DNA of 63,405 nucleotides, counting the filler, from Octopus bimaculoides (Eukaryota): the NCBI RefSeq assembly GCF_001194135.2. It is 3 parts of 2 records of this genome, joined end to end, with 100 filler letters (N's around TTAATTAATTAA, not from the genome) between each part and the next. Parts side by side here need not be neighbours in the genome. Positions count along the whole stretch, not along the records: positions 46,802 to 63,405 come from NC_068981.1; 2 more parts are not named here. The stretch is one strand, 5' to 3'. The notes under the pieces are model-generated. The model saw only the letters and a program-made list of their open reading frames with translations. It searched no databases and was not told the DNA's origin. Position numbers and translations under genes: made by a program. The first letter of the stretch is position 1. Each line of letters begins with the position of its first letter. This document shows positions 46,758 to 63,405 of this stretch, piece by piece.

Positions 46758-46824
46758 NNNNNNNNNNNNNNNNNNNNNNNNNNNNNNNNNNNNNNNNNNN
46801 NTATATATATATATATATATATAT

Positions 46825-46887
<63 letters not shown>

Positions 46888-47659
46888 TATGTGTGTGTGC
46901 ACATACACACATACACATGTATACATGAATATATATAGGCATACACACATGGTACATGTGTGTGTATGTGTGAACATATGTATGTAGAGTCTGTGTATAA
47001 GTATGTGAGACACATCACTAGATAGACTGTGTATGCTTATTAACTCTGTATATGCATTCACCTTTTCATATGTTTGTTTTCCAGGAAACTTCACATGACC
47101 TGCTGTCAGCCTTTTGTTATTTTAGCTCATATACTCTTTGTAATGTCATCTAGATGTGTACAAATTTCTATGAAAGCCACTTAATATATATACATACACT
47201 GATATAGCTTCTATTATCATACACTTCTAGTTGTTGTCTATACAGAGAATTCTAATGATTCTAATGTTCTGATATAGTGATGTAACTAATTTGCAAGGAA
47301 TTTCATTCAAATTTTATCATTGTTGTCAACCACCACTACTGTCTGTTACTCTTCTTATGTTTCACCCACTGTCCACCTTCCAGGCCCTATACTTTCATAG
47401 GCCCTACTTCATAGAATCTGTCTGCCCCTAGAACATCAACTTTTCTGGAATTCCCTTGATGGTCACATTCTCCCTTTTTAAAGCTGATTTACAAAATATG
47501 CTAGCCAAACATAAGTTGCATTCATTTCACAAGTCTGAAGACTAGATGCACGACCCTTCCTGCAGACTAAGCCATGAAATGACCATAACCACCACCTAAA
47601 CCACCACCATCACCTAAACCACCACCATCACCTAAACCACCACCACCACCACCACCACC

Positions 47660-47689
<30 letters not shown>

Positions 47690-47700
<11 letters not shown>

Positions 47701-49602
47701 TCCATTCTACTATAAGCACAAGGCCTGAAATTTGTGAGCATTGGGGTCAGTGGATTAAATTGATTCCAGGGCTTAACTTGTACTTTATTTTATTGACCCC
47801 AAAAGGATGAAAGGCAGTGTTGATCTCGGTGGAATTTGAACTCAGAATGTAAAGAGCCAGAAGAAATTCTTATTTCTTTACTGCCCACAAGGGGCTATAC
47901 ACAGAGGGGACAAACAAGGACAGACAAAGGGATCAAGTCGATTATGTCGACCCCAGTGCGTAACTGGTACTTATTTAATCGACCCTGAAAGGATGAAAGG
48001 CAAAGTCGACCTCGGCGGAATTTGAACTCAGAACGTAACAGCAGACAAAATACCGTTAAGCATTTACCCCAGCGTGCTAACGTTTCTACCAGTTCACCAG
48101 CCAGAAGAAATTCTATTAAGCATTTTGTCTGACATATTAACAATTCTGCCAGCTCACCACCTTAATGATAATAATAATAATCCTTAGTTTGACACAAGGC
48201 CATCAATTTTGTGGGGGAGTCGATCCCAGTGCTCAACAAGTACCTATTTTACTGGTCCCACAAAAGGATAAAAGACAATATCGACCTCAACAGAATTTGA
48301 ACTCAGAACATTAAGACAGATGAAATGCTGCTAAGCATTTAGCTAATGCTTCTGCCAGTGCACTGCCTTAATAATAACAATAATAGTAATAATGATTTCA
48401 AATTTTGGCACAAAGACAACTATTTCGGTAAGTCGATTGCATCAACTCCTGTGTTCAACTGATGCTTATTTTATCAACCCTGAAAGGATGAAAGGCAAGG
48501 TTTTAATAATAATAATCACCATAATAACAATCCTTTCTTCTTCTACAGGCACCAAGGCCTGAAATTTAGGGGAGGGGACTAGTCGATTATATCATCCTGA
48601 GCACTTAACTAGTACTTTATCATCCCTAAAGGATGAAAAGCAAAGTTGAATTTAGTGGAATTTGAACTCAGTATGTAAATAGAGCAAATATTGCAGAGCA
48701 CTTTTTCTCTCGATACTCTAATAATCCTGCCAGCTAGCCACCCTTAACTGTTTCTGATATAGATGAGACACCATAAGTTTGGAATGACAGGGATAGTCAA
48801 TTATATTATATTCAGTACTTGACTTGTACTTTATTGTATTGACTCTGGAATGCAAAGTGGGCTTTGGTGAGATTAGAACTTTGAACATAAAGTGATGGAA
48901 TGAAAACTGAAAAGCATTTTGCTTGATTCTCTAACAGTTCTGCCACTCCATTGCTCTAACAATAATCACCATTTTGACCAGACTATTAGATGTTGTTACA
49001 CACCACTGGTCACAATGCGTTACCTTGCATTGTTGTAGCTTTTGAATGATGCCATACCACTGGCTAGGCAGGCATGCAAGCAGAGCAGTCTGTTACAAGG
49101 TTACTCATTTACAACTGACTGAACTGAAGCAATGTGAAATTAAGTGTTTTGCTCAAAAACGCAATGCACCACCAGTCCCGGAATCAAAACCATAATTTTA
49201 CAATTGTGAGTGCAACATGCCTTCACATAATAATAGTAATGATAATAATAATAATGATAATAATACCCTTATCAGACAGGTAGTCATGATGGGTATAATG
49301 GGCTTTGTATATTTTACTCGTGTCACTTAGATGGCATGTACTGCTCTCTCACTCAATAATAATAATAATTATCATTATTATTATTGTTGTTTCCGATATA
49401 AGTAAATACTAGCAGTTTTGGAGGCAGGGATTTAGCTGATACCATTGACCCTAGTGCTTGATTGGTACTATATTTTACTGATCTTAAAAAGATGAAAAAC
49501 AAAATTAACCCCAGTAGGATTTAAACTCAGAATGTTAGAAGATGGAACAAATACCACAAGGCATTTCCTCCTACACACTTATGATTTTGCCATCTCATTT
49601 CC

Positions 49603-49605
<3 letters not shown>
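47690..49605 (-). mobile_element. Head-to-tail SINE array (mostly family B) separated by (AAT)n; young copy nested at 47871-48098
   Basis: 16-bp TSD agccagaagaaattct at 47855-47870 and 48099-48114; units begin near 47700, 48180, 48390, 48530, 48760 and 49390. Confidence 0.85.
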
Positions 49606-49634
<29 letters not shown>

Positions 49635-49821
49635 TTTCTTTTATAAGACATGGCCATCAGATTTTACAATTGCATTGTACCTCACCTGTTTGTATCTTTA
49701 GATGTAAAAACCTGTTCTTTGAATTCTCTGGCTGAGGCTTTGGTGCAGCTTGTATAAATTAAAGCAAAGGTAAAGCATGATGATAAAAATAAAAATAATA
49801 ATAATAGTAATTGACATGTAG

Positions 49822-49898
49822 CTAATATAGTGTTTTCTTTCTCTTTCAGGTAAGTTCTTATTTCTAGAAAAGGTATCAACTTTAGAAAACAAAAAGGT
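49822..49898 (+). other. Candidate recursive splice site with cryptic exon
   Basis: CTAAT (49822-49826), 15 consecutive pyrimidines (49833-49847), CAG|GTAAGT (49847-49855), downstream donors AAG|GTATCA (49873) and AAG|GTAAAA (49897). Confidence 0.45.
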
Positions 49899-50694
49899 AA
49901 AAATTATTTTGTTTTATAACTTTCTAGTCTAACATTCTTTTACATAAGCTCACAGTCTTTTTTTTCTCTTTCACATACATACACACACATATATATGCCC
50001 ATCCATGATTCACTATCTTCAAATAACTTTCTAGCCCTCTTCTTATCTGTTTCCATTTTTCTTGAATTTTTTTTTTTTTTTTTTTTTTTTGCAGTAGTAA
50101 CTAATCCACTAGAAACTCATGTTGTTTCCTTAAATAACCAGTTGCTTAGAAATGTTGCTTAAAGGTGTATGGCTTATCTAGTCAACAGATATATGTTAGT
50201 ACTCGGTTGTTGACATTGAAGATGTTACTACTAACAGTTTGCTAGAGAATTATTAACGATGCCAAATCGGTAAGAGGTTTCAGTAACATTTAGATGCTGA
50301 GAAATATTAGCATCACTTAGTAAACAGTTTGACCCTTTTGATACCAAACTATCTGAAACTGCTCTTGGTTCTATAATACAAATTCCTTGAATTAAAATCT
50401 TCCATCAAAATTTCATGTTAATTTATATTCCAAACGTTGTCGTCATCATTTAATGTTCTCCTCACCTGCTGGCATGGGTTGGACAGTTTGACAGGAGCTG
50501 GCCAAGCAGGAGCCTTTGCCATGCTTCTGTATTTGCTTTGGCATGGTTTTTATGGCTGGATGCCCTACCTAACACCAACCACTCCGAAGAGTGGGCTGAA
50601 TGCTTTTTACATGGCACTCACACAGACAATGTCAGTGCTAAATGCCATATTAATAATAATAGTTGGCAGCGTATTCCAATATAAATATATAATT

Positions 50695-50899
50695 TATTTT
50701 TTACTTGTTTTAGTCATTGGATTAAGGCCATGCTGGAATACCACCTTGATGGCTTTAGTCACAAGGATGTAGCAAATCAACATCAGTTGTCAAGTAGTAA
50801 GGGCACAAACACACACACAAATGTACATGTGCATATATATATGTAGACACACACACACACATATATGTGCATGTGCACATACATACATACACACATACA

Positions 50900-50966
<67 letters not shown>

Positions 50967-51212
50967 TTTTGCTTGTTTCAGTCATATGACTGAGACCATA
51001 CTGGAGCAACACCTTCAAAGGTTTTTAGTCAAAGAAATTAGCCCAGGACTTATTCTATCAGTGTTTTTTTGCCAAACTGCTAAGTTACAGGGACTTAAAC
51101 ACATCAACATTGGTTGTCAAGTGATAGCAGGGAGACAAACACAGACACAAAGACACACGCACACACAAATATATACATACATATATGTGTGTGTGTGTGT
51201 GTGTGTGTGCTT

Positions 51213-51244
<32 letters not shown>

Positions 51245-52509
51245 GGCTTCTTTTCAGTTCCCATCTACCAAATCCACTCACAAGGCTTTAATCAGCTTGA
51301 GGCTATAGTAGAAGATACTTGCCCAAGGTGCCATGCAGTGGGACTAGGCAAATTGAAAATTAGAATTAACAAATAACAAAACAACAAACGTCAAAAGGAT
51401 GTACACATGGAAAATATAGCTTGACACTCATTATAAGATGGAAAAAAGAGTGAGTGAATAACATTTCGCACATAGCTCATTGTCAGAAAGGGAAGATCTG
51501 GAGAAGGAAAAAAAAGTCCAAGAAAAGCATATGTGTAATTACATGGCTCACACACACACACACATACATACATACATACATACATACAATGGTTTGCTAT
51601 ACAGTCTCCATCCACCAAATTCACTCGCAAGGTATTAGTTGGCTCAGAGCTACAATAGAGGAAACTTTCCCAAGGTGTCATGCAATTGGAGGGACTGAGC
51701 CCAAAACCACATGGTTACAAAGCAAACACTTGAACTATGCACCCATTCTTTGTGTCTATATATGATAACAAAAGGATTAAAGAATCATAAAGCAATAGAA
51801 TTTGAAAATATTGTCTACAAGACAGCCATAATATTTAGAATTAAGTTCAAAATAAAGAGTATTAATAGCAGATTACAAAACAAAGAAATTAATTGACAAG
51901 ATTTCATGGTTTACATGTATGGCTTTATAAATAAATTTAGTCTGAGAATACTTTAGTTTCAATATATTTTCTGATTACAAATTGTAGTCTTATGGATGTA
52001 ACTAAATGAAAGGAGGAATAAAGAGATAGGATAAAGAATAAGTTAGAAGAAGAAAAGGAAAAGTAGAAAATCATAGTGAAATTTATCTTGAAGAATGCAA
52101 TGTTTTCCAACCTGGATGCTGGAACATATTGGTGTGCTGCCAACAGTTTCCAAACTTACAATAAAATTGTCTTATTTACATCTCTAACATTGGTTAAAGT
52201 TCTTAGTGGATAATTTCACAAAATGGAATAAATAACACAAAGTTGTTGTTATAAAAATACATAAAATATGATGTCGCTAACAAAGATTTGGTTATGTTAT
52301 ATTTAGCTGGTTTCTCTCTGATTGTCTTTAGTACCAGGTGGTTCATTGCCAGCATTTACATGATTCTCATTTTACATTTTTTTTTAAATAAACAGATCAG
52401 CAAGATGAATTCTAAGGTTTCATTGGTGAAAAACAAAAATTGTCTGATAACTGAGTGGGCCAAAAACCATTCCTAGAGAAAAAATCCATATACATGAGCA
52501 ATCGTTTTA

Positions 52510-52569
<60 letters not shown>

Positions 52570-53085
52570 CACACATACATACATACATACATTCATACGT
52601 CTGTTCACTTGGTGACAGAATGTGCAAAAAAGTATCCAATCCGGCAAGAGATAAATATCATTGAATGTATTCATAAAATGGTATACATATATCATTTAAC
52701 TTTTATTTCTTTCAGTCATTAGACTGTGGCCATGCTGGGGCACTGCCTTGAAGAATTTTAGTCGAATGACTCAACCTCAGTAATTATTTTTTTAAACCTG
52801 ATGCTTATTCTATCGATCTTTTTTGCAAGACTACTAATTTATGGGGATGTAAGCATACCAACACCACTTGTAAAGTGATGGTGGGGGATAAACAGACACG
52901 CACACACTCACATACATATATATACATACACATGATGGGCTTCTTTCAGTTTCTGTCTACCAAATCCACTCACAAGGCTTTTGTTGGCCCAAGGCTATAG
53001 TAGAGTATCATGCAGTGGCATTGAACCAGGGATCATATTGTTGGGAAGCAACAAACTTCTCACCACACAGCCACACTTACATTTA
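50695..53085 (-). mobile_element. Three SINE family C copies (50695-51352, 51590-51745, 52705-53085)
   Basis: Reverse-complement matches to the family C head (..ccaaatccactcacaaggct..cccaaggtgccatgcagtgggact) and tail. Confidence 0.85.
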
Positions 53086-53094
53086 TATCCCCAC

Positions 53095-53136
<42 letters not shown>

Positions 53137-53543
53137 GCTGCATTTTGTTACATTTTTAGTAGGTATGCAGTACATTTTATCATGATACTGTAATATATTC
53201 TGCATTAATCTTATCATTTGATTTGGCAGATATTTCAATCAAAAAGTAAATATACACTAATAACTTTTAAAAGAAATAATTATTCTATGTATTTTCCCAG
53301 TTGATATGATGTTGATGCTTTCTCAAAGACCTTCATTAATTATTAATATAATTTAACTTAATGAGTTAATCATGTGGGTTAAGTTACTGAATTACTCTTT
53401 CAACAGCTAACCACAGCTAATTAGAGAGCTACTTCATTTAACTAATTCTATAAAGTTGTCAAATTTTCTTCAACAAATCTATTACAATCGTTAAAATACA
53501 CACTACATATAAATAGTCCCAATACTATGGAAGTGTTGTGTTT

Positions 53544-53694
53544 CTGAAAGTCTTGCCATAGTGTAGAATTCTGTTACCACTATTATAATATAGACTTCAA
53601 TATTATAATAGTAGTAACAGAATTCTGTAATATAGAAGGCTATAAGAAAATGTGTTTTGTGTTACCAAATTCTACGTTATGGCAAGATTTTCAG
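53544..53694. repeat. Nested inverted repeats: 27-bp outer TIR-like pair and a 27-bp inner hairpin
   Basis: Inner arms 53565-53591 / 53600-53626 (1 mismatch, 8-nt loop); outer 53544-53570 / 53668-53694 (24 of 27 match). Confidence 0.85.
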
Positions 53695-54138
53695 CAATGC
53701 TTCTGTAACTCAAACTCAGTACTAGATACTATGACTATGTGCTAACAATGATGGGATGATCACGGCTAGGATACAATCTATTGATGAATTGGTGATGTCT
53801 CCTATTCAAATAAGTCAACGAGTAAGCTTCTATGTAGTCCTTAGGCCTGCTAAAAATAGCAGCTAAATGTTCAAGTTTTGCAGTAACATCTCAAAAAGAG
53901 GAAAGGTACATTAAATAATGTAGTCATAGATACACAGTACCTAACTAAAAAGAAACTTATAAAATAAAGAAAAAGATGAGATGTTTACACTCAGGAAACC
54001 ATTGATTATAGTACTGTACAACCAGAACTGACGGGGTAAACAACAATAACAATCAACATTAACACGAAAGGGATGTAAAACAGAATGAGAGAGAGAGAGA
54101 AACAGACAGACAGAGAGTGTGTGTATGTGTGTGTGTGT

Positions 54139-54170
<32 letters not shown>

Positions 54171-54897
54171 TACAATCATTCTTACAATCCAGTTTCCAGT
54201 TCAACTAAACAATTAAGTCCCATGGAAATTTCACATTTTATAGATATTCTTATTCTATTTTGATACAAATATCTATATATCTTCATTTGTAACATTATTT
54301 TCTTATGTTAAAGATCTTGATTACGTCTTCGATTTCATTCCATACAAAAGGTTGTTTAAAGCATAACATTTGAACTTATTTCATTATATTAAAGATTTCA
54401 CTTATGTCTTCAAATGTGCAATATTCTTAACTTATTCTATTACATTAAAAATTTCAGTTATGTCCTTGATTTCGTTCCATAGTTAAGGTTGCTTAACACT
54501 TTGCTTACAATTGAGTGTCACCAATGAAGGTTTTTTTTTTCAATGAAGCCTCATGTTACTATGGTTCAAACTACATTATCCGAATTTTAAGAAATGTACA
54601 AGATATGTTTCTTTGTCTTTCTCAAACTGTTTTCAATTTGAATCAGTAGAAGCCAAGATATCATCATTTAACATCCATTTTCCATGATGGCATGGGTTGG
54701 GTAGCTTGACAGGAGCTAGGACCAGGTAAACAAAATGTCTTTCATAAGTAAAACAATGCTTTATTGTAACACAATTGTAATATATTACTGGAATGTAGCA
54801 TAATTTCCATAAAATTAAGAAAAAATTCCCCAAAAACTCTATCCACAATTATATTCTGTGGAAAAAAATCATAAATAAATGAAAACATTCATAAACA

Positions 54898-55555
54898 GCA
54901 TGGCTGTGTGGTAAGAAGTTTGCTTCCCAACTACATGGTTCTGGGTTCAGTCCCACTGCATGGCACTTTGGGCAAGTGTCTTCTATTATAGCCGCAGACC
55001 AACCAAAACGTGAGTGAATTTTGGTAGATGGAAACTGAAAGAAGCTCATCATGTGTATGTGTGTGGATGTGTGTTTGTCCCCTACCACCACTTGACAACT
55101 GGTGTTGGTGTGTTTACATCCCTGTACCTTAGTGATTCAACAAAGAAGACTGATAAAATAAGTATCAGACTTCATCATCATCCTTTGACTAACCTATGGT
55201 TGGTCAGAACTCCATTGACCATCCCTTTATTCACTGCATGGTCCTGCATTGCTGTGTTCAGATCTCTAATATCTAACCCTGAGTCCCAAGATATAGAATC
55301 TGGAAATGTCAGTTTCCTGAAGAAAACACTTCCAGAGGGATACCATAGGAGCAGGAATGAGATAACCGCTTTCTTTGCTCAATGACAGTGGTCAGCAAAT
55401 TGTAGCTATTTCTGATTTAGCTTGAGGGATATTGGTATCAGATTTCTGTATCAGACTTTAAAATAAGTACTGGGGTCAATACATCCAACTATAATTCTTC
55501 AAGGTGGTGCTCCAGCATGGCCACAGTCTAATGACTGAAACAAGTAAGATAAAAG
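54898..55555 (+). mobile_element. SINE family C interrupted by a ~275-bp minus-strand retroposon
   Basis: 11-bp TSD gtatcagactt at 55162-55172 and 55448-55458; the insert begins catcatcatc. Confidence 0.82.
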
Positions 55556-56982
55556 ATAATGGACATTTTAATACTTTTTAACATGTGTATTATCGGTGAC
55601 TCCCATGGTACAGAAGAAATATAATACTCCTTCTGTGCTGCAGGAATGACCAGTAGTAGCCATACTATAAATCAATGTGGTAGTTTATATAGTGTGCTAG
55701 AACATATGTACAGTAATGCCTTGCTATATAAATTAATTTCTTCCTGGAGACTGCTCATAAAGTGAAAACTCATAAGGCAGAGCAATAACTTCCCATAGTA
55801 GCAATATTATAAATTGCAATTCATTCCCAGAAAAGTATTTTACCTATAAAATTTATAATACTCATAATTAAATGGCAATAAAACAACAGCAGAATGTCAA
55901 GAATATTTTATGTAAAGTAAAAAGAATGTCAAGATCATTTATAATAAAAAATATTATTATAATAATTTTCTGAATTACTTTCACTCGCACTAGACTTGCG
56001 CACACCATCATTTGAAGATATGATCACTGATTCACAAGCACTCATAGACAGACTTGTAAATTTCTTTTTAAAAAAACAAGTCAAGAAGTGTTTACTTAGA
56101 AGTAACTTTTTTTTCACTCTTAATAAATTTCTCGGTAACACACAGAAGTATTTGTTATGGTAATAGAAAGTTTTGCATTTCACTCACAAAATGGCTGTTT
56201 AACCTTTTTATATTTATTATAGAATAAAACTCGTAAACCCAGGGTCTCATAAAGTGGGTCCTTGTAAAGCGAGATATTAGTGTATATGGTTAAAAATAAA
56301 AATAATTAAAAAACACTTGTAACAAAATTAGACCACTGGTACACAAGAAAATATGTCCACTAAATGGGTTTGGCAGGCAAAGTGTTAAAGCATAATATTT
56401 GAACTGACATCATGACAAGCAGAATAATTTTGTAGACTGTTTTGTTCATTCCTTTTCTTTATGTTACATAGAACCAAGACCAGAATTTTATAGAGAAGAA
56501 ATAAGAAAATATATTAATATCATTAGGAAGGGCATCCAGCCATAAAAACCATGCCAAATCAGACTGGAATCTGGTGACTGATTTTTAAAATTATAATTCC
56601 ATGAAAATAGTAACAAGCAATGTGAATGTATAGAAATGGTTACAAACAGAAATGAAACTGAAGTTACTTCAAGTCAATGATCTTGATTTTAGTATTTACA
56701 TGACATTTGTTTCAAATGTCCAAATTTTTGTTAATTATTCTTCAAGTGAACAAACATGGACAAAACATTTGTTACCATTTGATACTATTTGTTACCATTC
56801 CATCAGTACATTAACGTTGAATTTTATAGAAATTTAGTGAGGCATATGTGGTATGTATGGAGTTTTTTTGTTTTTTTTTTACTAATATGCATATATTGGA
56901 TGTATGTGGGTGTATGGAGGTGAATCTATCTATCTAATACTGCATGTATTAGATTTATGTTTGTGTACTTATATAAAGAATA

Positions 56983-57298
56983 AAGACCTCCTTCGGAAAT
57001 GAATGACCATAGGACTGCACCTAGAAAATTCCCCTCCAAAGCACAAGTCTGGGCAAGGTTGTTTATGAAATACCAGCTGTCGCCCATGCATACCAGCCTC
57101 CCCTCTCCATGCCACTGATGTTATCCAAGGGAAAAGCAAATGCAAATACAACTTGACATTAGTGACATCGCAACTCATTTCTATAGCTGAGTGAACTGGA
57201 GCAGCATGAAATAAAGTGGAGCAATGTGAAATAAAGTGTCTTGCTCAAGAACACAACACACAATCCAACACTCTAACCACTGAGTCATGTACCTTCAC
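56983..57298 (-). mobile_element. SINE, same family as 14755-15068
   Basis: End-to-end similarity; short internal duplication gagca..tgaaataaagtg. Confidence 0.85.
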
Positions 57299-57481
57299 TG
57301 TACTTATATACATATAATTAGACTACCCGTGACCCATTGGGTTACTGGGGATGTCTAAGTTTCCAGCAATGGAGTTTTGTTTTGTGGGTTTTTTTTTTTC
57401 TTTTCTATGTTATTTTGCATGCTTTCAACAAATGTGACATCGAAATCACATGTAAATGGCTCCTTTCCCCAGAAAAGAAAT

Positions 57482-57594
57482 GATTTGGCTGCTATTTCTT
57501 GCATGCTCTGCTACCATGTAACAGGTATTTCAGGTCCTTTATCACAAATAGCTGTTACATGGTAACAGGGCGTGCTAGAGATAGCAGCCAAATC
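57482..57594. repeat. Hairpin of ~43-bp arms built from a repeat terminus
   Basis: 57482-57524 vs 57552-57594, 38 of 43 match. Confidence 0.85.
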
Positions 57595-58205
57595 TTTGGA
57601 GGTGAGATATGTTGAATGCACTCGAAAGAAACCAATGGAAAAAATCTTTTTCACAACGAGGTTATGAATGGGACTTTTACAAAATATTTACTGTATTTTT
57701 AAAGTCATTTTCACTTAAAAATATTTTGCCCATCATGATGTTTCTAATGGAAAGGATAGTGTTTCTTCCCTTTCAGGATTAAGTTACTGAACATCTCAAT
57801 AATTATTGGTCCAATTTATGCGAAACTTGTTTTATTCCATTAGTATTCATATATCAGGGGCATTTTACTTGCAAAGTATTTTCCCATTATGTGCTAGTTT
57901 GACTGTGTAACATTGCAAGCAAGCAAGATTGAACTTCACTTTTAATGTATTATAGATAGATACGCATATATATGCATGTATGTTCATTTGTTCATGTTTA
58001 GGTCCATTTTCCATGCTAGTATGGATTATATANNNNNNNNNNNNNNNNNNNNNNNNNNNNNNNNNNNNNNNNNNNNNNNNNNNNNNNNNNNNNNNNNNNN
58101 NNNNNNNNNNNNNNNNNNNNNNNNNNNNNNNNNNNNNNNNNNNNNNNNNNNNNNNNNNNNNNNNNNNNNNNNNNNNNNNNNNNNNNNNNNNNNNNNNNNN
58201 NNNNN

Positions 58206-58238
<33 letters not shown>

Positions 58239-59529
58239 CATACACACACAGACACAGAGTTATATGTGCATATATGTATAGATATGCATGTACACACATA
58301 TAACATATACATGTATACATATGTAATGATGTGTGTGTGTGGCACAGGTGGGGTATGTGAGTATATATGCTTGTGTAAAGTACATTATGCAAGGAAAGAG
58401 CATACTGAATATGAAGTGTACCAGCCTAATTTCACATATTTCCACATAACTGACCTCCCAAGTATGGGGACAGCCTAAAACTGTGGATTATAATGAAGTG
58501 GATGGTGTTGGGATGAGGTTTGCTATGTTGGGGTGGATAGTGATGGGGTGAGAAGTGAAATTATCATCAGCTAACAGGAAAAATAACTTCTATGACAATT
58601 CATATCCACTGTCACTCAGAACATTTTTTGTATACAGCACACACGTTGTGCATCACCATGCCATCACCATGCATGTGTACTTACTATCTGACCTTCACAC
58701 TCTTATGTTCTTAAACTTATACACAGATATATGCCACTACAAACAGGCACTCACTAACATATACTCTTTCTATCTCCCTCTCTTTCTGTCTTTCTTGTGT
58801 GTATATGTGTGAGATTTTACACACACACACACACAGCTGTAAATACATGCATACATTGATCAGACTACGAGATTGTTCTAATAAAATTGTCTCCTATAGC
58901 CAAAGACTAATGACTAAAGCAAGTAAAAAATAAAAGATAAAAGGGAATGGACATTTTAACATTTTTTTAATATGTGTATCACTGGTGACCAGGCACAAAA
59001 AGGTCATGCATGTGTGTGTGTGTGTGTGTGTGCGTATGCACACACGCACATACACACACACACACACACAGCCAATGAATGAATATATATATATATATAT
59101 ATATATANNNNNNNNNNNNNNNNNNNNNNNNNNNNNNNNNNNNNNNNNNNNNNNNNNNNNNNNNNNNNNNNNNNNNNNNNNNNNNNNNNNNNNNNNNNNN
59201 NNNNNNNNNNNNNNNNNNNNNNNNNNNNNNNNNNNNNNNNNNNTATATAATGATTATTTAAAACAATCTGATCCAGCACCATGCGATTTAAAGTTTCATA
59301 AACTTCTCATAGGTATTTAGCTCATCGTGCTCAGACAACTAAATGCAGAGATGGAGAAAATCCAATATAGCTACTGGAAACTGGGCTGGTTTTTGGTCAA
59401 GGTGGGTCAAATGGTGTTGTTGAAATAGTATTGAAATATCACCACCATCAAATTAGAGATCACAATCTGAATATTTCATTAACCACGTGGCAGGACAGGA
59501 AGTTGATAGCATCTTGCTATCTGGATAGT

Positions 59530-60070
59530 GTGTGTGAAAAAATTAAGCAGCATTAATTGCTTGTGTGTGTGTGTCTGGTGTATGAATGTATATATGTGGA
59601 TGTTTGTAGTGCAGCATGTTTATCTGCTATGTGTGTCTGGGTGCCTGTACATGCAAGCTGGCACATGGGTATGTACTGGTGACATCAGCTCAATGGTGTG
59701 CATGTACGTGTCATTAGGATGTGTGGGTGTGGATGCTTATCAGTTATGTATGTGTGTTTGAGTGCACATATACATCAGTGTATTTATCAATTGTGTGCAT
59801 CAGCTGTGTGAGCATGTACGTGCATATGTACATGTACATCAGTTGTCTGCTGTATCCATGTTTGTGTGTGTGTGTGTATGTGAATGAATGTCTGGTGTAT
59901 GTGAATATGCACATTTCTGTATTTATGTGTGTATGTATGAATGTGTGCATGTTTATCTGCATGAGTGGGTGTGTGTGCCTTTACATGTGGTGTGTGAGTG
60001 TGTATGCATACCTCTGATATTTGTGTGTGTATGAGCACAACCAGTGTATGCTCTAATATGTGCATACAGG
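59530..60070. repeat. Degenerate (GT)n-rich low-complexity tract
   Basis: Direct reading; Cys/Val/Met-rich ORFs here are repeat translations. Confidence 0.8.
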
Positions 60071-60417
60071 ATTAGTGGGTGAGAATATACTGGTGCATTG
60101 TGCTTATATATTTATACATTTTCATGGAAACATAAAAATTTGCAACAGGAAGAACATCCAATCATAGGAAATCTACTCCACCAGGTTTCTTCTGACCCAT
60201 ACGAGCATAGAAAAGTGGATGTTAAGATAATTATGATGATAGTGAGGTGTGTGTGGCTTGGCTCTCCATTGCTTATGATCACAAGTGTTCCAGTTGATTC
60301 AAAAACAAAACAGCCCACTTGTGAAATTAATGTGTAAGCAGCTGAGCTCCTCACAGATATGTGTACCCTTAACATAACTGCTATGAAGACTAGACACTGA
60401 TTGTGGGGAATATACTC

Positions 60418-60820
60418 TTTTACTCTTTTACTTGTTTCAGTCATTTGACTGCGGCCATGCTAGAGCACCACCTTTAGTCAAGCAAATCGACCCCAGGACT
60501 TATTCTTTGGAAGCCTAGTACTTTTTCTATCGGTCTTTTTTGCCGAACCGCTAAGTTACGGGGACGTAAACACACCAGCATCGTTTGTCAAACGATGTTG
60601 GGGGGACAAACACAGACACACAAACACACACACACACATATATATATACATATATACGACAGGCTTCTTTCAGTTTCCGTCTACCAAATCCACTCACAAG
60701 GCTTTGGTCGGCCCGAGGCTATAGAAGAAGACACTTGCCCAAGGTGCCATGCAGTGGGAATGAACCTGGAACCATGTGGTTGGTAAGCAAGCTACTTACC
60801 ACACAGCCACTCCTGCGCCT
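60418..60820 (-). mobile_element. SINE family C, full length, young
   Basis: Complete head to tail with CpGs retained. Confidence 0.92.
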
Positions 60821-60959
60821 ATGTTGAGTAAAATCATAATTAACTGATCCTCGTGTGTTTTCTTTTACCCAAAGCCAGGAACATTTCAGCATCTCCTCAT
60901 ATAAGTGCCTGAAATCACCACACTTCCCTGAACAGGATGCCAGTCTGTTGCTGGCTTCA

Positions 60960-61160
60960 TGCCCAACAATTTTAAGGAGAGGGGACAAGTTGATTGCATC
61001 AGCTCAAGTACTTGACTGGTAATGCTTTTTACCAACCCCAAAGGGATTAAAGGCAAAGTTGACATTGGTGGGATTTGAACTCAGAACATAAAGAACCAAA
61101 AGAAATGCCACTTAGCATTTTGCCCAATGTGCTAATAATTCTGCCAGTTTGCCGCCCTTC
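60960..61160 (-). mobile_element. SINE family B, diverged
   Basis: aaaggcaaagttgacattggtgggatttgaactcagaac..ctgccagtttgccgcc. Confidence 0.8.
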
Positions 61161-61636
61161 TGATATGTTTGTAAATGTGTGTATGTATTTGTCTGTGACT
61201 GTGTGTGTGTGTTGTGAATCGTATGGTATCAGCTAAAAGCTTTCACTGCCATTTAACAGTAAACAAAGATCATTACCACAATGACTATCAGTTGAATCGT
61301 CTCATATTGCTAATTGTTTCTCAAGCTACTCTACTTTGGATAAGAAAAAAAATAAATATTTTTAAATGTGTGTGTGTGTGTGTAAAAACGAAAATAATCT
61401 TTGTGGCTTCTTACAATATATCTGTTGAAATGCCGGTCTAATATGAGTGAATGTATTGTGCAGGGAAGAATATATAAATATTAGCTTATAGTACTTTTAG
61501 TATAATAAATAAAGTGTATAAGAGCAAGGCATATATGTATGTTATGAATGTGCACAAGTTAAATGTATATAAATGGCATATATTTCCATTTATTGCTTGT
61601 ATGCATGTGTGTATGTATATGTCATGTGTGTGTAAG

Positions 61637-61667
<31 letters not shown>

Positions 61668-61703
61668 TGAGTTAGTTTTAGTGAAGCATTGTGAGGTATA
61701 CCT

Positions 61704-62160
61704 TTAAAGAATGTAGTTGTGTAAGGCCAGAACAATGCGAGAATGTACAAAGTAAACTACAAAAGGAAAAGAAAACAGAACAAAGTTGCAGTTTTACCTT
61801 GTATCTCTATATTTCAGGGTAAAGACCCCTTCTTCAGAACATTCAGAAAAGTGGTTCTTAACCTCTTCCAGCTACCGTTTTTCGAAATGTCCTGAAGAAG
61901 GGGTCTTCACCCTGAAATATAGAAATACGAGGTAAAACTGCAACTTTATTTTGTTTTCTGTTTCTTGTGTAGTTTACTTTTGCACCTTCTCACATTGTTC
62001 CAGCCTTACACAACAATATTCTTTAATATATTTCGTTTTGGGATTTGGTTTGCAAGATTTTTTATGTGATTTCGTGTGTTGAAGCATATTCTGTTGTGTC
62101 TGGGGAGAGTCATTTTCTTATTGTGCCTTAAAATTTAACACACTCACTGGTAAAATTTCC
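61704..62160. mobile_element. Inverted Penelope-like termini (arms 61704-61843 / 61886-62026), each with a hammerhead motif
   Basis: Right arm atgtc-CTGAAGA-AGGG-gtcttca-CCCT-GAAA-TAT-A-gaaat; reverse-complement copy in the left arm. Confidence 0.7.
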
Positions 62161-63017
62161 ACATATATATATATATATATATANNNNNNNNNNNNNNNNN
62201 NNNNNNNNNNNNNNNNNNNNNNNNNNNNNNNNNNNNNNNNNNNNNNNNNNNNNNNNNNNNNNNNNNNNNNNNNNNNNNNNNNNNATATATGATACAGAAA
62301 TAATTTATTCTCAAATGCATGATAATGCTAATACAATAGCGTTCATGCTTTTGTATTAGCATTAGCATTGTATATACAACATAATAATATTGTTTATAAA
62401 CAATCCCTCATAGTACCCCATGATAAAATTTCCTCTGTATTAACATCATAGGTTTTATTAGCATCTTGCCCCTTTAACTGATAATTAACATCTTGATTTT
62501 GGGTCTTCTCCCAGCCTCCTTTATAGACAGTTACTTTATACCTGATTTACTACTCCTAAAATTTTGACAATATTTATGACTATACTTAGCCATGGGCTGT
62601 CAACTCACTCTTGCCCTCCATTCTAAGCAGACACAGTCCTCTAGTCTTAGATTTAGTAGTTGATAAAAAAGACTAATAAATTAAAAATGAACCACAATCC
62701 TTTACAAGCTATAACCCCAACAAGCTTCATGCATTTCTTGGAAGTGTAGTATATTCTTAGCTACAATAGCAACAACATGGATTTCTTCCATCTTCTTGCT
62801 CTGTTAGAGTGTTTGAGTAAAATTATATTAAAGTGTCCGACTGATTAAAATTCTGTTTCTTTATTTGTGCAGCTGATGATAGCCCTGCATTTAAATTGAT
62901 GTAATAATTGCATTGTTCAATTAAATGGAGCCGCTTGAAATGGTCGTACTGCATCACTTCTTGATATCCTGTTGCTTATTTTGATACACACACACACACA
63001 CACATATATATATATTA

Positions 63018-63405
63018 GTTAGCGACTTTGGGATCAAGGTAAACTGGGTGCCCAGAATTAGACCGGCTTGGAGGAGAAGGGTGTGGAAGCTTAAAGACCC
63101 TGCAAATGGACAGAGACTTAGAGACAAGTTACTTGAAGCATTTAACGAAATAGAAGGGGATATAGCATCATACAACGTGGAAGACAATTGGAGATTTCTG
63201 CGGGACAACCTGTTGAAAGCCACCGACCAGATTTGTGGGTGGTGTAAGGTCCCCTCCCGACCCAGAGTAACGTGGTGGTGGAACAAGGAGGTAGACAGGG
63301 CTATTAGACAAAAGAAACAGGCTTGGAAGGACTGGAAGAACGGTGGTAGCAGGAAATTGTACCAATGTGCCAGAAGGGAGGCTAGGCGACAGGTTTATTT
63401 AGCCA
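63018..63405 (+). CDS. RTE LINE ORF fragment (region between endonuclease and RT), uninterrupted, runs off the window
   Basis: Open frame VSDFGIKVNWVPRIRPAWRRRVWKLKDPANGQRLRDKLLEAFNEIEGDIASYNVEDNWRFLRDNLLKATDQICGWCKVPSRPRVTWWWNKEVDRAIRQKKQAWKDWKNGGSRKLYQCARREARRQVYLA, with the RTE-typical W..L and WWWN..V..A...KK.AW motifs. Missed by the ORF track because it has no stop inside the window. Confidence 0.9.

What the first reader, a model, noticed from the sequence alone, without database searches (positions are those of the whole stretch)
49822..49898. Textbook recursive-splice (ratchet) site with a 47-nt cryptic exon
Seen: branch-like CTAAT 24 nt upstream, 15 uninterrupted pyrimidines, then CAG immediately followed by a perfect donor GTAAGT; downstream donors at 49873 and 49897 define 23- or 47-nt exons (the latter open as KFLFLEKVSTLENKK). 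Established: Drosophila ratchet points have this AG|GT architecture with a short cryptic exon, and vertebrate RS-exons behave similarly in very long introns. Inference: recursive splicing in a long cephalopod intron; I know of no such description but cannot search. By my rough estimate the 9-mer alone is not unexpected in this much AT-rich DNA; the combination with tract and branch point is what stands out.
Basis: partly seen in the sequence, partly recalled or inferred. Interest (0 to 1): 0.7.

Follow-up and report, generated by a model that had tools for sequence, protein, structure and literature searches.

The report
Recursive-splice look-alike motif, use unproven
A short stretch that reads exactly like a fly-type recursive splice site really is in the sequence and is rare for this DNA, but nothing I could reach shows that it lies in a transcribed intron, so it is most likely an unused look-alike and only an RNA-seq check could promote it.

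Summary
These are CTAAT (49822-49826), 15 uninterrupted pyrimidines (49833-49847), CAG|GTAAGT (49847-49855), and donors at 49873 and 49897 that bound 23- and 47-nt segments.

The 8-mer AGGTAAGT alone is not unusual. The full tract+AG+GTAAGT combination is rare in this piece: about 2e-5 to 2e-2 expected, depending on strictness. At the scale of a 2.7-Gb genome (size assumed) that still means a few to about 1,000 chance sites.

All sequence-level criteria of Drosophila ratchet points are met: TT at -5/-6, branch A at -25, a roughly 50-nt out-of-frame cryptic exon, and a weaker downstream donor. The branch motif and the downstream donors add little, because they occur by chance at 5-55% of positions.

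The defining functional criteria could not be tested: sense-strand long intron, junction, lariat or saw-tooth reads, and conservation. The reachable databases hold no annotated genome matching this DNA.

The piece is a patchwork of SINE copies, microsatellites and a LINE fragment. There is no detectable exon and no strand skew. Retroelements run 14:1 on the + strand, which argues weakly against + strand transcription.

Estimated odds: chance look-alike about 0.55, genuine recursive splice site about 0.3.

The parts
49822..49826 (+). Branch-point-like CTAAT (A at 49825, position -25 from the AG|G boundary)
   Evidence: It falls inside the -36 to -21 window reported for fly ratchet-point lariats (10.1101/006163). 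CTAAY occurs in such a window at 4.7% of random positions and YTNAY at 40%. A second candidate, TTGAC at 49811-49815, has its A at -36.
49833..49847 (+). Polypyrimidine tract, 15/15 pyrimidines, with T at -5 and -6
   Evidence: It is one of only two AG sites in the piece, both strands counted, with a 15/15 tract.
49848..49849 (+). Acceptor AG (in CAG), immediately abutting a donor
49850..49855 (+). Donor GTAAGT. With the preceding CAG it is a 9/9 match to MAG|GTRAGT, the only 9/9 among about 2,000 GT sites on both strands
49850..49896 (+). Putative 47-nt cryptic (RS) exon, ending before donor AAG|GTAAAA at 49897 (7/9). A 23-nt alternative ends before AAG|GTATCA at 49873 (6/9)
   Evidence: 47 and 23 are not multiples of 3, and two of the three frames carry stops.
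49429..49636 (+). Nearest upstream repeat: a SINE-like copy with an (AAT)n tail. The site itself is not in any repeat found within the piece
49777..49811 (+). AAT/A-rich run directly upstream of the branch region

Best explanation
This is a fortuitous juxtaposition of a strong acceptor (branch-like CTAAT, Y15, CAG) and a consensus donor (GTAAGT). It sits in a roughly 430-nt unique interval of repeat-dense, AT-rich non-coding DNA, and it is not selected for or used as a splice site.

Shown: the motif exists, it is locally rare, and no exon, gene or transcript evidence surrounds it.

Inferred: in a multi-gigabase genome a handful to hundreds of equally good or nearly as good motifs arise without function, and most of them lie outside sense-strand introns.

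If the + strand were transcribed through this site, U2AF/U2 and U1 would be expected to recognise it. The 'unused' reading therefore depends on the site not lying in a + strand intron.
For: The core 8-mer is expected by chance: 0.60 per source, and 43 of 100 shuffles have at least one.

The accessory features are common by chance: a downstream donor at 16-55% of positions, and a branch motif at 5-40%.

Genome-scale expectation is about 2-4 perfect sites and about 700-1,200 near-perfect sites (>=12/15 Y) from Markov models. Observed tract frequencies raise this roughly 10-fold.

No coding exon was detectable anywhere in the 16.6-kb piece. There were no Pfam domains. About 4,500 aa of + strand open segments had no homologues. 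The ORFs over the site had none either.

The piece is SINE, LINE and microsatellite mosaic. Retroelements are 14 on + and 1 on - (plus the LINE fragment). Poly(A)-signal hexamers number 37 on + and 23 on -, and TA and GC skews are about 0. None of this is what a + strand sense intron would be expected to show.

Human base rate: 10.6 million intronic AGGT loci, 1.67 million passing a splice-site model, and 3,022 with read support (preprint 10.64898/2026.09.10.750672).
Against: Taken at full strictness the motif is far rarer than chance in this piece, at 2e-5 to 4e-4.

It meets every sequence criterion of fly ratchet points, including TT at -5/-6, which 99.5% of them have, and a roughly 50-nt out-of-frame cryptic exon with a weaker donor.

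The 'chance' verdict rests on base rates and weak strand hints, not on direct evidence of non-use. The genome size (2.7 Gb) and the expected TE-orientation bias come from my own knowledge of other genomes and were not measured for this organism.
Confidence: 0.55

Rival explanations
1. This is a genuine intronic recursive splice site (ratchet point) with a cryptic RS-exon.

Proposed mechanism: the 47-nt (or 23-nt) segment is first defined as an exon by U2AF/U2 at the Y15-CAG acceptor and U1 at the downstream donor. The upstream exon is spliced to 49850. This regenerates a strong donor (exon end + GTAAGT) that out-competes the weaker GTAAAA/GTATCA donors. The cryptic exon and the rest of the intron are then removed in a second step, leaving no trace in the mRNA.
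For: Perfect Y15-CAG|GTAAGT. TT at -5/-6 and a branch A at -25, as in fly ratchet points. The cryptic exon is 47 nt, out of frame and carries stops, matching 'short (~50 nt), poorly conserved, generally out of frame' (PMC8605326). The regenerated donor scores 9/9 in the genomic CAG context (only its GTAAGT half is fixed; the three exon-side bases would come from the upstream exon), against 7/9 and 6/9 for the downstream donors. The strict motif is expected only 2e-5 to 4e-4 times per piece. The site is not part of any repeat seen in the piece.
Against: There is no evidence that the site is transcribed, lies in an intron, or is on the sense strand. TE orientation and poly(A)-hexamer counts lean the other way. 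Conservation was not testable. In large vertebrate genomes only a tiny share of motif-bearing sites are used. No recursive splicing has been reported in cephalopods or molluscs in the searchable literature, so its prevalence there is unknown.
Confidence: 0.3
2. This is the edge of an ordinarily expressed exon. It could be the acceptor of a short alternative, poison or non-coding exon starting at 49850 (an expressed RS-exon or plain cassette). It could instead be the donor of a short non-coding or UTR exon ending at 49849.
For: Strong acceptor and donor signals. Frame 3 stays open through the 47-mer. Expressed RS-exons exist in flies and mammals (PMC8605326).
Against: All + frames upstream of 49849 close within 6-11 codons, so no coding exon longer than 33 nt can end here. 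Two of the three frames downstream hit stops within 6 codons. No protein homologue exists for any open segment of the + strand. The sequence is AT-rich, intron-like DNA.
Confidence: 0.08
3. The motif belongs to an unrecognised interspersed repeat whose consensus happens to carry Y-tract-CAG-GTAAGT. It would then be present in many copies and say nothing about this locus.
For: The piece is almost wholly repeats. The site lies between a SINE tail (49636) and a T28 run (50063-50090), directly after an AAT-rich run like the SINE tails.
Against: blastn at word size 7 finds no second copy of 49813-49900 within the 16.6 kb, although other families recur 2-8 times. ORFs over the site have no homologue among 1.84 billion representative proteins or in the indexed search. 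An exact 24-mer scan of metagenome contigs gave 0 hits.
Confidence: 0.07

Closest known systems
Drosophila intronic ratchet points (zero-nucleotide recursive splice sites with cryptic RS-exons; Hatton 1998, Burnette 2005, Duff 2015, Joseph 2018/2021)
   Same: Juxtaposed acceptor and donor with consensus (Y)n-CAG|GTAAGT. TT at -5/-6. Branch A within -36 to -21. A short (~50 nt) out-of-frame downstream segment ending in a weaker donor.
   Different: Fly sites are defined by location in long introns (11-133 kb), junction and lariat reads, saw-tooth coverage and deep conservation. None of these is available here. The fly genome is about 20 times smaller (my own knowledge), so a motif match there carries far more weight.
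Vertebrate RS-exons in long neuronal genes (Sibley 2015; Blazquez 2018; Boehm 2018, as summarised in PMC8605326)
   Same: An exon-definition step followed by competition between the regenerated donor and the RS-exon donor. Cryptic exons carry stops or frameshifts.
   Different: Only nine fully suppressed sites in long introns were considered definitive in mammals. Those are supported by RNA evidence and conservation, which this site lacks.
Unused intronic or intergenic AGGT pseudo-sites (human candidate sets in 10.64898/2026.09.10.750672)
   Same: AG|GT with a plausible acceptor and donor but no evidence of use. Of 10.6 million intronic AGGT loci, 1.67 million pass a splice model and 3,022 have read support.
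   Different: This site is at the extreme top of motif quality (15/15 tract, 9/9 donor). It is therefore a much better candidate than a typical AGGT.

Membership tests
Intronic ratchet point / recursive splice site | [quoted passage not shown] | tested here: met
   TTTTCTTTCTCTTTCAG|GTAAGT at 49833-49855. It is the only 9/9 donor in the piece.
Intronic ratchet point / recursive splice site | TT at positions -5 and -6 (99.5% of fly ratchet points) | tested here: met
   T at 49845 and at 49844. The criterion is from 10.1101/006163.
Intronic ratchet point / recursive splice site | Branch point 21-36 nt upstream of the acceptor, shown by lariat reads | tested here: inconclusive
   The A of CTAAT is at -25. 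Such motifs occur by chance at 5-40% of positions. Lariat reads are not available.
Intronic ratchet point / recursive splice site | Short cryptic RS-exon (~50 nt, usually out of frame) ending in a donor weaker than the regenerated one | tested here: met
   A 47-nt segment to GTAAAA (7/9) or a 23-nt segment to GTATCA (6/9), against 9/9 at the ratchet donor in its genomic CAG context. Both lengths shift the frame. The criterion is from PMC8605326. The chance rate of such a donor is 16-55%.
Intronic ratchet point / recursive splice site | Lies inside a long intron, on the sense strand of an expressed gene | not testable with these tools
   No annotation or gene was found. Weak indirect hints point against + strand transcription.
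Intronic ratchet point / recursive splice site | Exon-to-ratchet junction reads and saw-tooth coverage in total or nascent RNA | not testable with these tools
   No RNA-seq is reachable.
Intronic ratchet point / recursive splice site | Conservation peak on the AG|GT core relative to the flanking intron | not testable with these tools
   No orthologous sequence was retrievable.
Boundary of a constitutive coding exon | Open reading frame running into or out of the splice junction, with protein homology | tested here: not met
   The + frames close 6-11 codons upstream. Two of the three frames stop within 6 codons downstream. There are no homologues.
Interspersed repeat copy (SINE/LINE/MITE) | Other copies of the same sequence | tested here: inconclusive
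   There are none within the piece and none in the protein or metagenome collections. The source genome itself could not be searched.

The most novel reading that the evidence does not exclude
The site is a working recursive splice site in a long gene of a cephalopod, or at least of a non-insect, non-vertebrate animal. It would be the first documented in Lophotrochozoa. That would imply that ratchet-type removal of long introns, with the same (Y)n-CAG|GTAAGT plus cryptic-exon architecture, is ancestral to bilaterians or evolved again in another lineage with long genes.
Probability: 0.3. Interest if true: 0.5.

Novelty: not a real feature. Interest (0 to 1): 0.25.

Why it matters
Recursive splicing is documented in insects and vertebrates. 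I found no report for cephalopods or molluscs in the searchable literature.

A validated site would extend the mechanism to a third major animal lineage, one with very large genomes and long genes. It would also give a concrete locus to test.

A single motif match does not do that. Its value is as a cheap, precise target: one coordinate, 49849|49850, to look up in existing annotation and total RNA-seq.

The more general point is that the 8-mer and the accessory signals are uninformative in AT-rich DNA. Only the full tract-plus-donor combination is rare. Even that needs a genome-wide count of sense versus antisense occurrences before any single instance can be believed.

Tried and rejected
- **Concatenated + strand query.** About 4,500 aa of + strand open segments plus the LINE fragment, joined as one protein query to find host-gene exons: 1,361 word candidates, none significant. 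This was probably limited by the word index and by the near absence of proteins from this organism in the database.
- **LINE-like fragment alone.** Five unnamed hits on ENA/Logan contigs under 1.3 kb. A literature search for the run accessions gave nothing useful.
- **Exact look-ups.** Three ORFs around the site were looked up to recover the source contig. None is on record.
- **Homologues of the minus-strand ORFs over the site.** None in the indexed search and none in the exhaustive search.
- **Exact 24-mer scan of metagenome contigs.** 0 hits.
- **Rfam, ARAGORN and Pfam.** Rfam gave only sub-threshold miRNA-model hits on TG/TA microsatellites and hairpins. ARAGORN found no tRNA genes. Pfam found no domains. 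None gave a strand marker such as an intronic snoRNA.
- **Literature search for SINE core sequences**, to verify the organism: 0 papers.
- **Strand asymmetry as a proxy for transcription.** TA and GC skews are about 0. This is uninformative without a baseline for this genome.
- **Rejected readings.** The end of a coding exon. A copy of one of the repeat families present in the piece.

Full report
**The observation**

- CTAAT is at 49822-49826. Its second A, at 49825, lies 24 nt before the G of the acceptor AG (position -25).
- Fifteen uninterrupted pyrimidines, TTTTCTTTCTCTTTC, span 49833-49847.
- CAG at 49847-49849 abuts GTAAGT at 49850-49855.
- AAG|GTATCA at 49873 and AAG|GTAAAA at 49897 bound segments of 23 and 47 nt.
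- Frame 3 of the 47-mer reads KFLFLEKVSTLENKK. Frames 1 and 2 contain stops.
- T is present at -5 and -6.
- An AG at 49829-49830 lies only 4-5 nt after the branch A. From general knowledge of 3' splice-site choice, not tested here, that is too close to compete.

**Chance**

The 8-mer AGGTAAGT alone is unremarkable. It occurs once against 0.60 expected, and 43 of 100 shuffles have at least one.

The combination is different.
- Y10-N-CAGGTAAGT with up to 2 mismatches is seen once against 0.02 expected.
- Counting both strands, 54 AG dinucleotides are preceded by at least 12/15 pyrimidines and two by 15/15. The finding is the only one of them followed by GT at all.
- GTAAGT has a frequency of 2.2e-4.
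- Markov models of order 1-4, trained with the site masked, put the perfect motif at 3-7e-10 per position. That is about 2e-5 per piece. Scaled to an assumed 2.7-Gb genome (size from my own knowledge of octopus genomes), it is about 2-4 sites.
- Relaxing the tract to >=12/15 gives about 700-1,200 sites per genome.
- One further 15/15 tract was observed in the piece, which suggests that real tracts are roughly 10-fold commoner than the models predict.

The accessory features carry little weight.
- A >=7/9 donor lies 20-100 nt downstream of 16% of positions, and a >=6/9 donor of 55%.
- YTNAY falls in the branch window at 40% of positions and CTAAY at 4.7%.

The motif is therefore locally significant. 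At genome scale, however, a handful of perfect look-alikes and hundreds of good ones are expected without any function.

**Surroundings**

The piece is AT-rich (27-43% GC). It contains three assembly gaps flanked by TA microsatellites and many TA, CA, GATA and AAT microsatellites. Most of the rest is interspersed repeats.
- A roughly 200-nt SINE-like family with (AAT)n tails has eight copies, all on the + strand. Seven are packed into 47735-49645 and one lies at 60987-61176.
- A roughly 420-nt SINE-like family with an internal CA/TA microsatellite has five + copies and one - copy.
- There are two smaller repeat families.
- A LINE-like open frame at 62985-63404 runs into the piece's edge. Its only relatives are five unnamed ORFs on short ENA/Logan contigs.

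The finding lies in a roughly 430-nt interval between a SINE tail (49636) and a T28 run (50063-50090), directly after an AAT-rich run (49777-49811). Its core, 49813-49900, has no second copy in the piece.

No tRNA gene was found. No Rfam family reached threshold; the hits are microsatellite or hairpin artefacts. No Pfam domain was found.

**Gene context, strand and conservation**

These decide the interpretation, and none could be obtained.
- About 4,500 aa of + strand open segments gave no protein homologue.
- ORFs around and over the site are not on record and have no homologues.
- An exact 24-mer scan of metagenome contigs found nothing.
- The reachable collections evidently do not include an annotated genome for this DNA.

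The indirect hints lean weakly away from + strand transcription.
- SINE and LINE copies are 14 on + and 1 on - (plus the LINE fragment). In other animals intronic retroelements tend to be antisense to the host gene. That is my own knowledge and was not measured here. The seven clustered copies may also not be independent events.
- AATAAA/ATTAAA hexamers number 37 on + and 23 on -.
- TA and GC skews are -0.006 and +0.011, each within about one standard error of zero.

One alternative can be excluded. All three + frames close 6-11 codons upstream of 49849, so the site is not the end of a normal coding exon.

**Comparison with the known family**

Duff et al. (preprint 10.1101/006163) define fly ratchet points by the following:
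- AG|GT with a prominent pyrimidine tract;
- TT at -5/-6 in 196 of 197 sites;
- branch points at -36 to -21;
- introns of 11-133 kb;
- junction reads, saw-tooth coverage and lariats;
- conservation.

Joseph et al. [quoted passage not shown]

The site meets every sequence-level criterion. The context and RNA-level criteria were not testable.

Base rates differ widely between lineages. There are more than 500 intronic ratchet points in the small fly genome. In mammals only nine fully suppressed sites in long introns are regarded as definitive. A 2026 preprint reports 3,022 read-supported sites among 10.6 million intronic AGGT loci, of which 1.67 million pass a splice-site model.

I found no paper on recursive splicing in octopus or cephalopods. 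The one paper containing both terms concerns microexons.

**Weighing**

This paragraph is inference. Suppose this genome had fly-like densities of strongly consensus ratchet points. A perfect motif would then almost certainly be real. With vertebrate-like densities, real perfect sites would be outnumbered by the roughly 10-70 expected chance sites.

Averaging over that uncertainty, and discounting slightly for the strand hints, gives these estimates:
- about 0.3 that this is a used recursive splice site;
- about 0.55 that it is an unused look-alike;
- about 0.08 that it is the edge of an expressed alternative or non-coding exon;
- about 0.07 that it is part of an unrecognised repeat.

If the + strand is transcribed through the site, use by the spliceosome is likely, because acceptor, branch, donor and exon-definition signals are all strong.

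**Verdict**

The interpretation cannot be decided with these tools. My best guess is a chance motif, so I file it as not (yet) a real feature. It has low to moderate interest and a cheap decisive test: look up the annotation, search total RNA-seq for junction reads to 49850, and check cross-species conservation.

Noticed in passing
window 47735-49645, plus 60987-61176: Seven copies of a roughly 200-nt SINE-like element lie head-to-tail in the same (+) orientation within 1.9 kb, and an eighth lies 11 kb away. The consensus includes ...GGTGGAATTTGAACTCAGAAC... and each copy ends in an (AAT)n tail. This looks like either tandem amplification or repeated insertion into each other's AAT tails.
   Followed up: partly
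window 50684-50747 (partial copy), 50967-51343, 51550-51759, 52687-53074, 60407-60830 (+); 54901-55556 (-): A second SINE-like family of about 420 nt carries an internal CA/TA microsatellite. Conserved blocks include TTTCAGTCATTTGACTGCGGCCATGCTGG and CCAAATCCACTCACAAGGC. Its 5' block itself contains a pyrimidine-rich ...TTGTTTCAG acceptor look-alike.
   Followed up: partly
whole piece 46802-63405: Retroelement copies are 14 on the + strand and 1 on the - strand, and AATAAA/ATTAAA hexamers are 37 against 23. This strong orientation bias could reflect a - strand host gene, local duplication, or insertion preference.
   Followed up: partly
window 62985-63404 (+), open to the piece's edge: A LINE-like ORF fragment (...VTWWWNKEVDRAIRQKKQAWKDW...) has no Pfam domain. 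Its only relatives are five unnamed ORFs (42-68% identity) on ENA/Logan contigs shorter than 1.3 kb, presumably host DNA in sequencing runs.
   Followed up: partly
window 61749-61855 / 61874-61980; 57490-57586; 53550-53641: There is a long near-perfect palindrome (107-nt arms, 88% complementary, 18-nt spacer). Two shorter hairpins hit plant or animal miRNA models below threshold on both strands. All are MITE-like foldback elements.
   Followed up: no
window 58033-58205, 59108-59243, 62184-62284: Three runs of N (173, 136 and 101 nt) are each flanked by TA microsatellite. These are assembly gaps at simple repeats, and they generate spurious long 'repeats' and ORFs with X in the tool outputs.
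   Followed up: yes
window 46870-46985, 50800-50965, 51130-51240, 52510-52600, 59000-59075: The Rfam hits to mir-297, mir-466, mir-3149 and others, with E-values down to 1e-9 but far below gathering scores, all sit on (TG)n/(TA)n/(CA)n microsatellites. They are artefacts, not miRNA genes.
   Followed up: yes
window 50063-50090: An uninterrupted run of 28 T lies 210 nt downstream of the site. It may be the poly(A) tail of a - strand retroposon whose body lies to the right.
   Followed up: no
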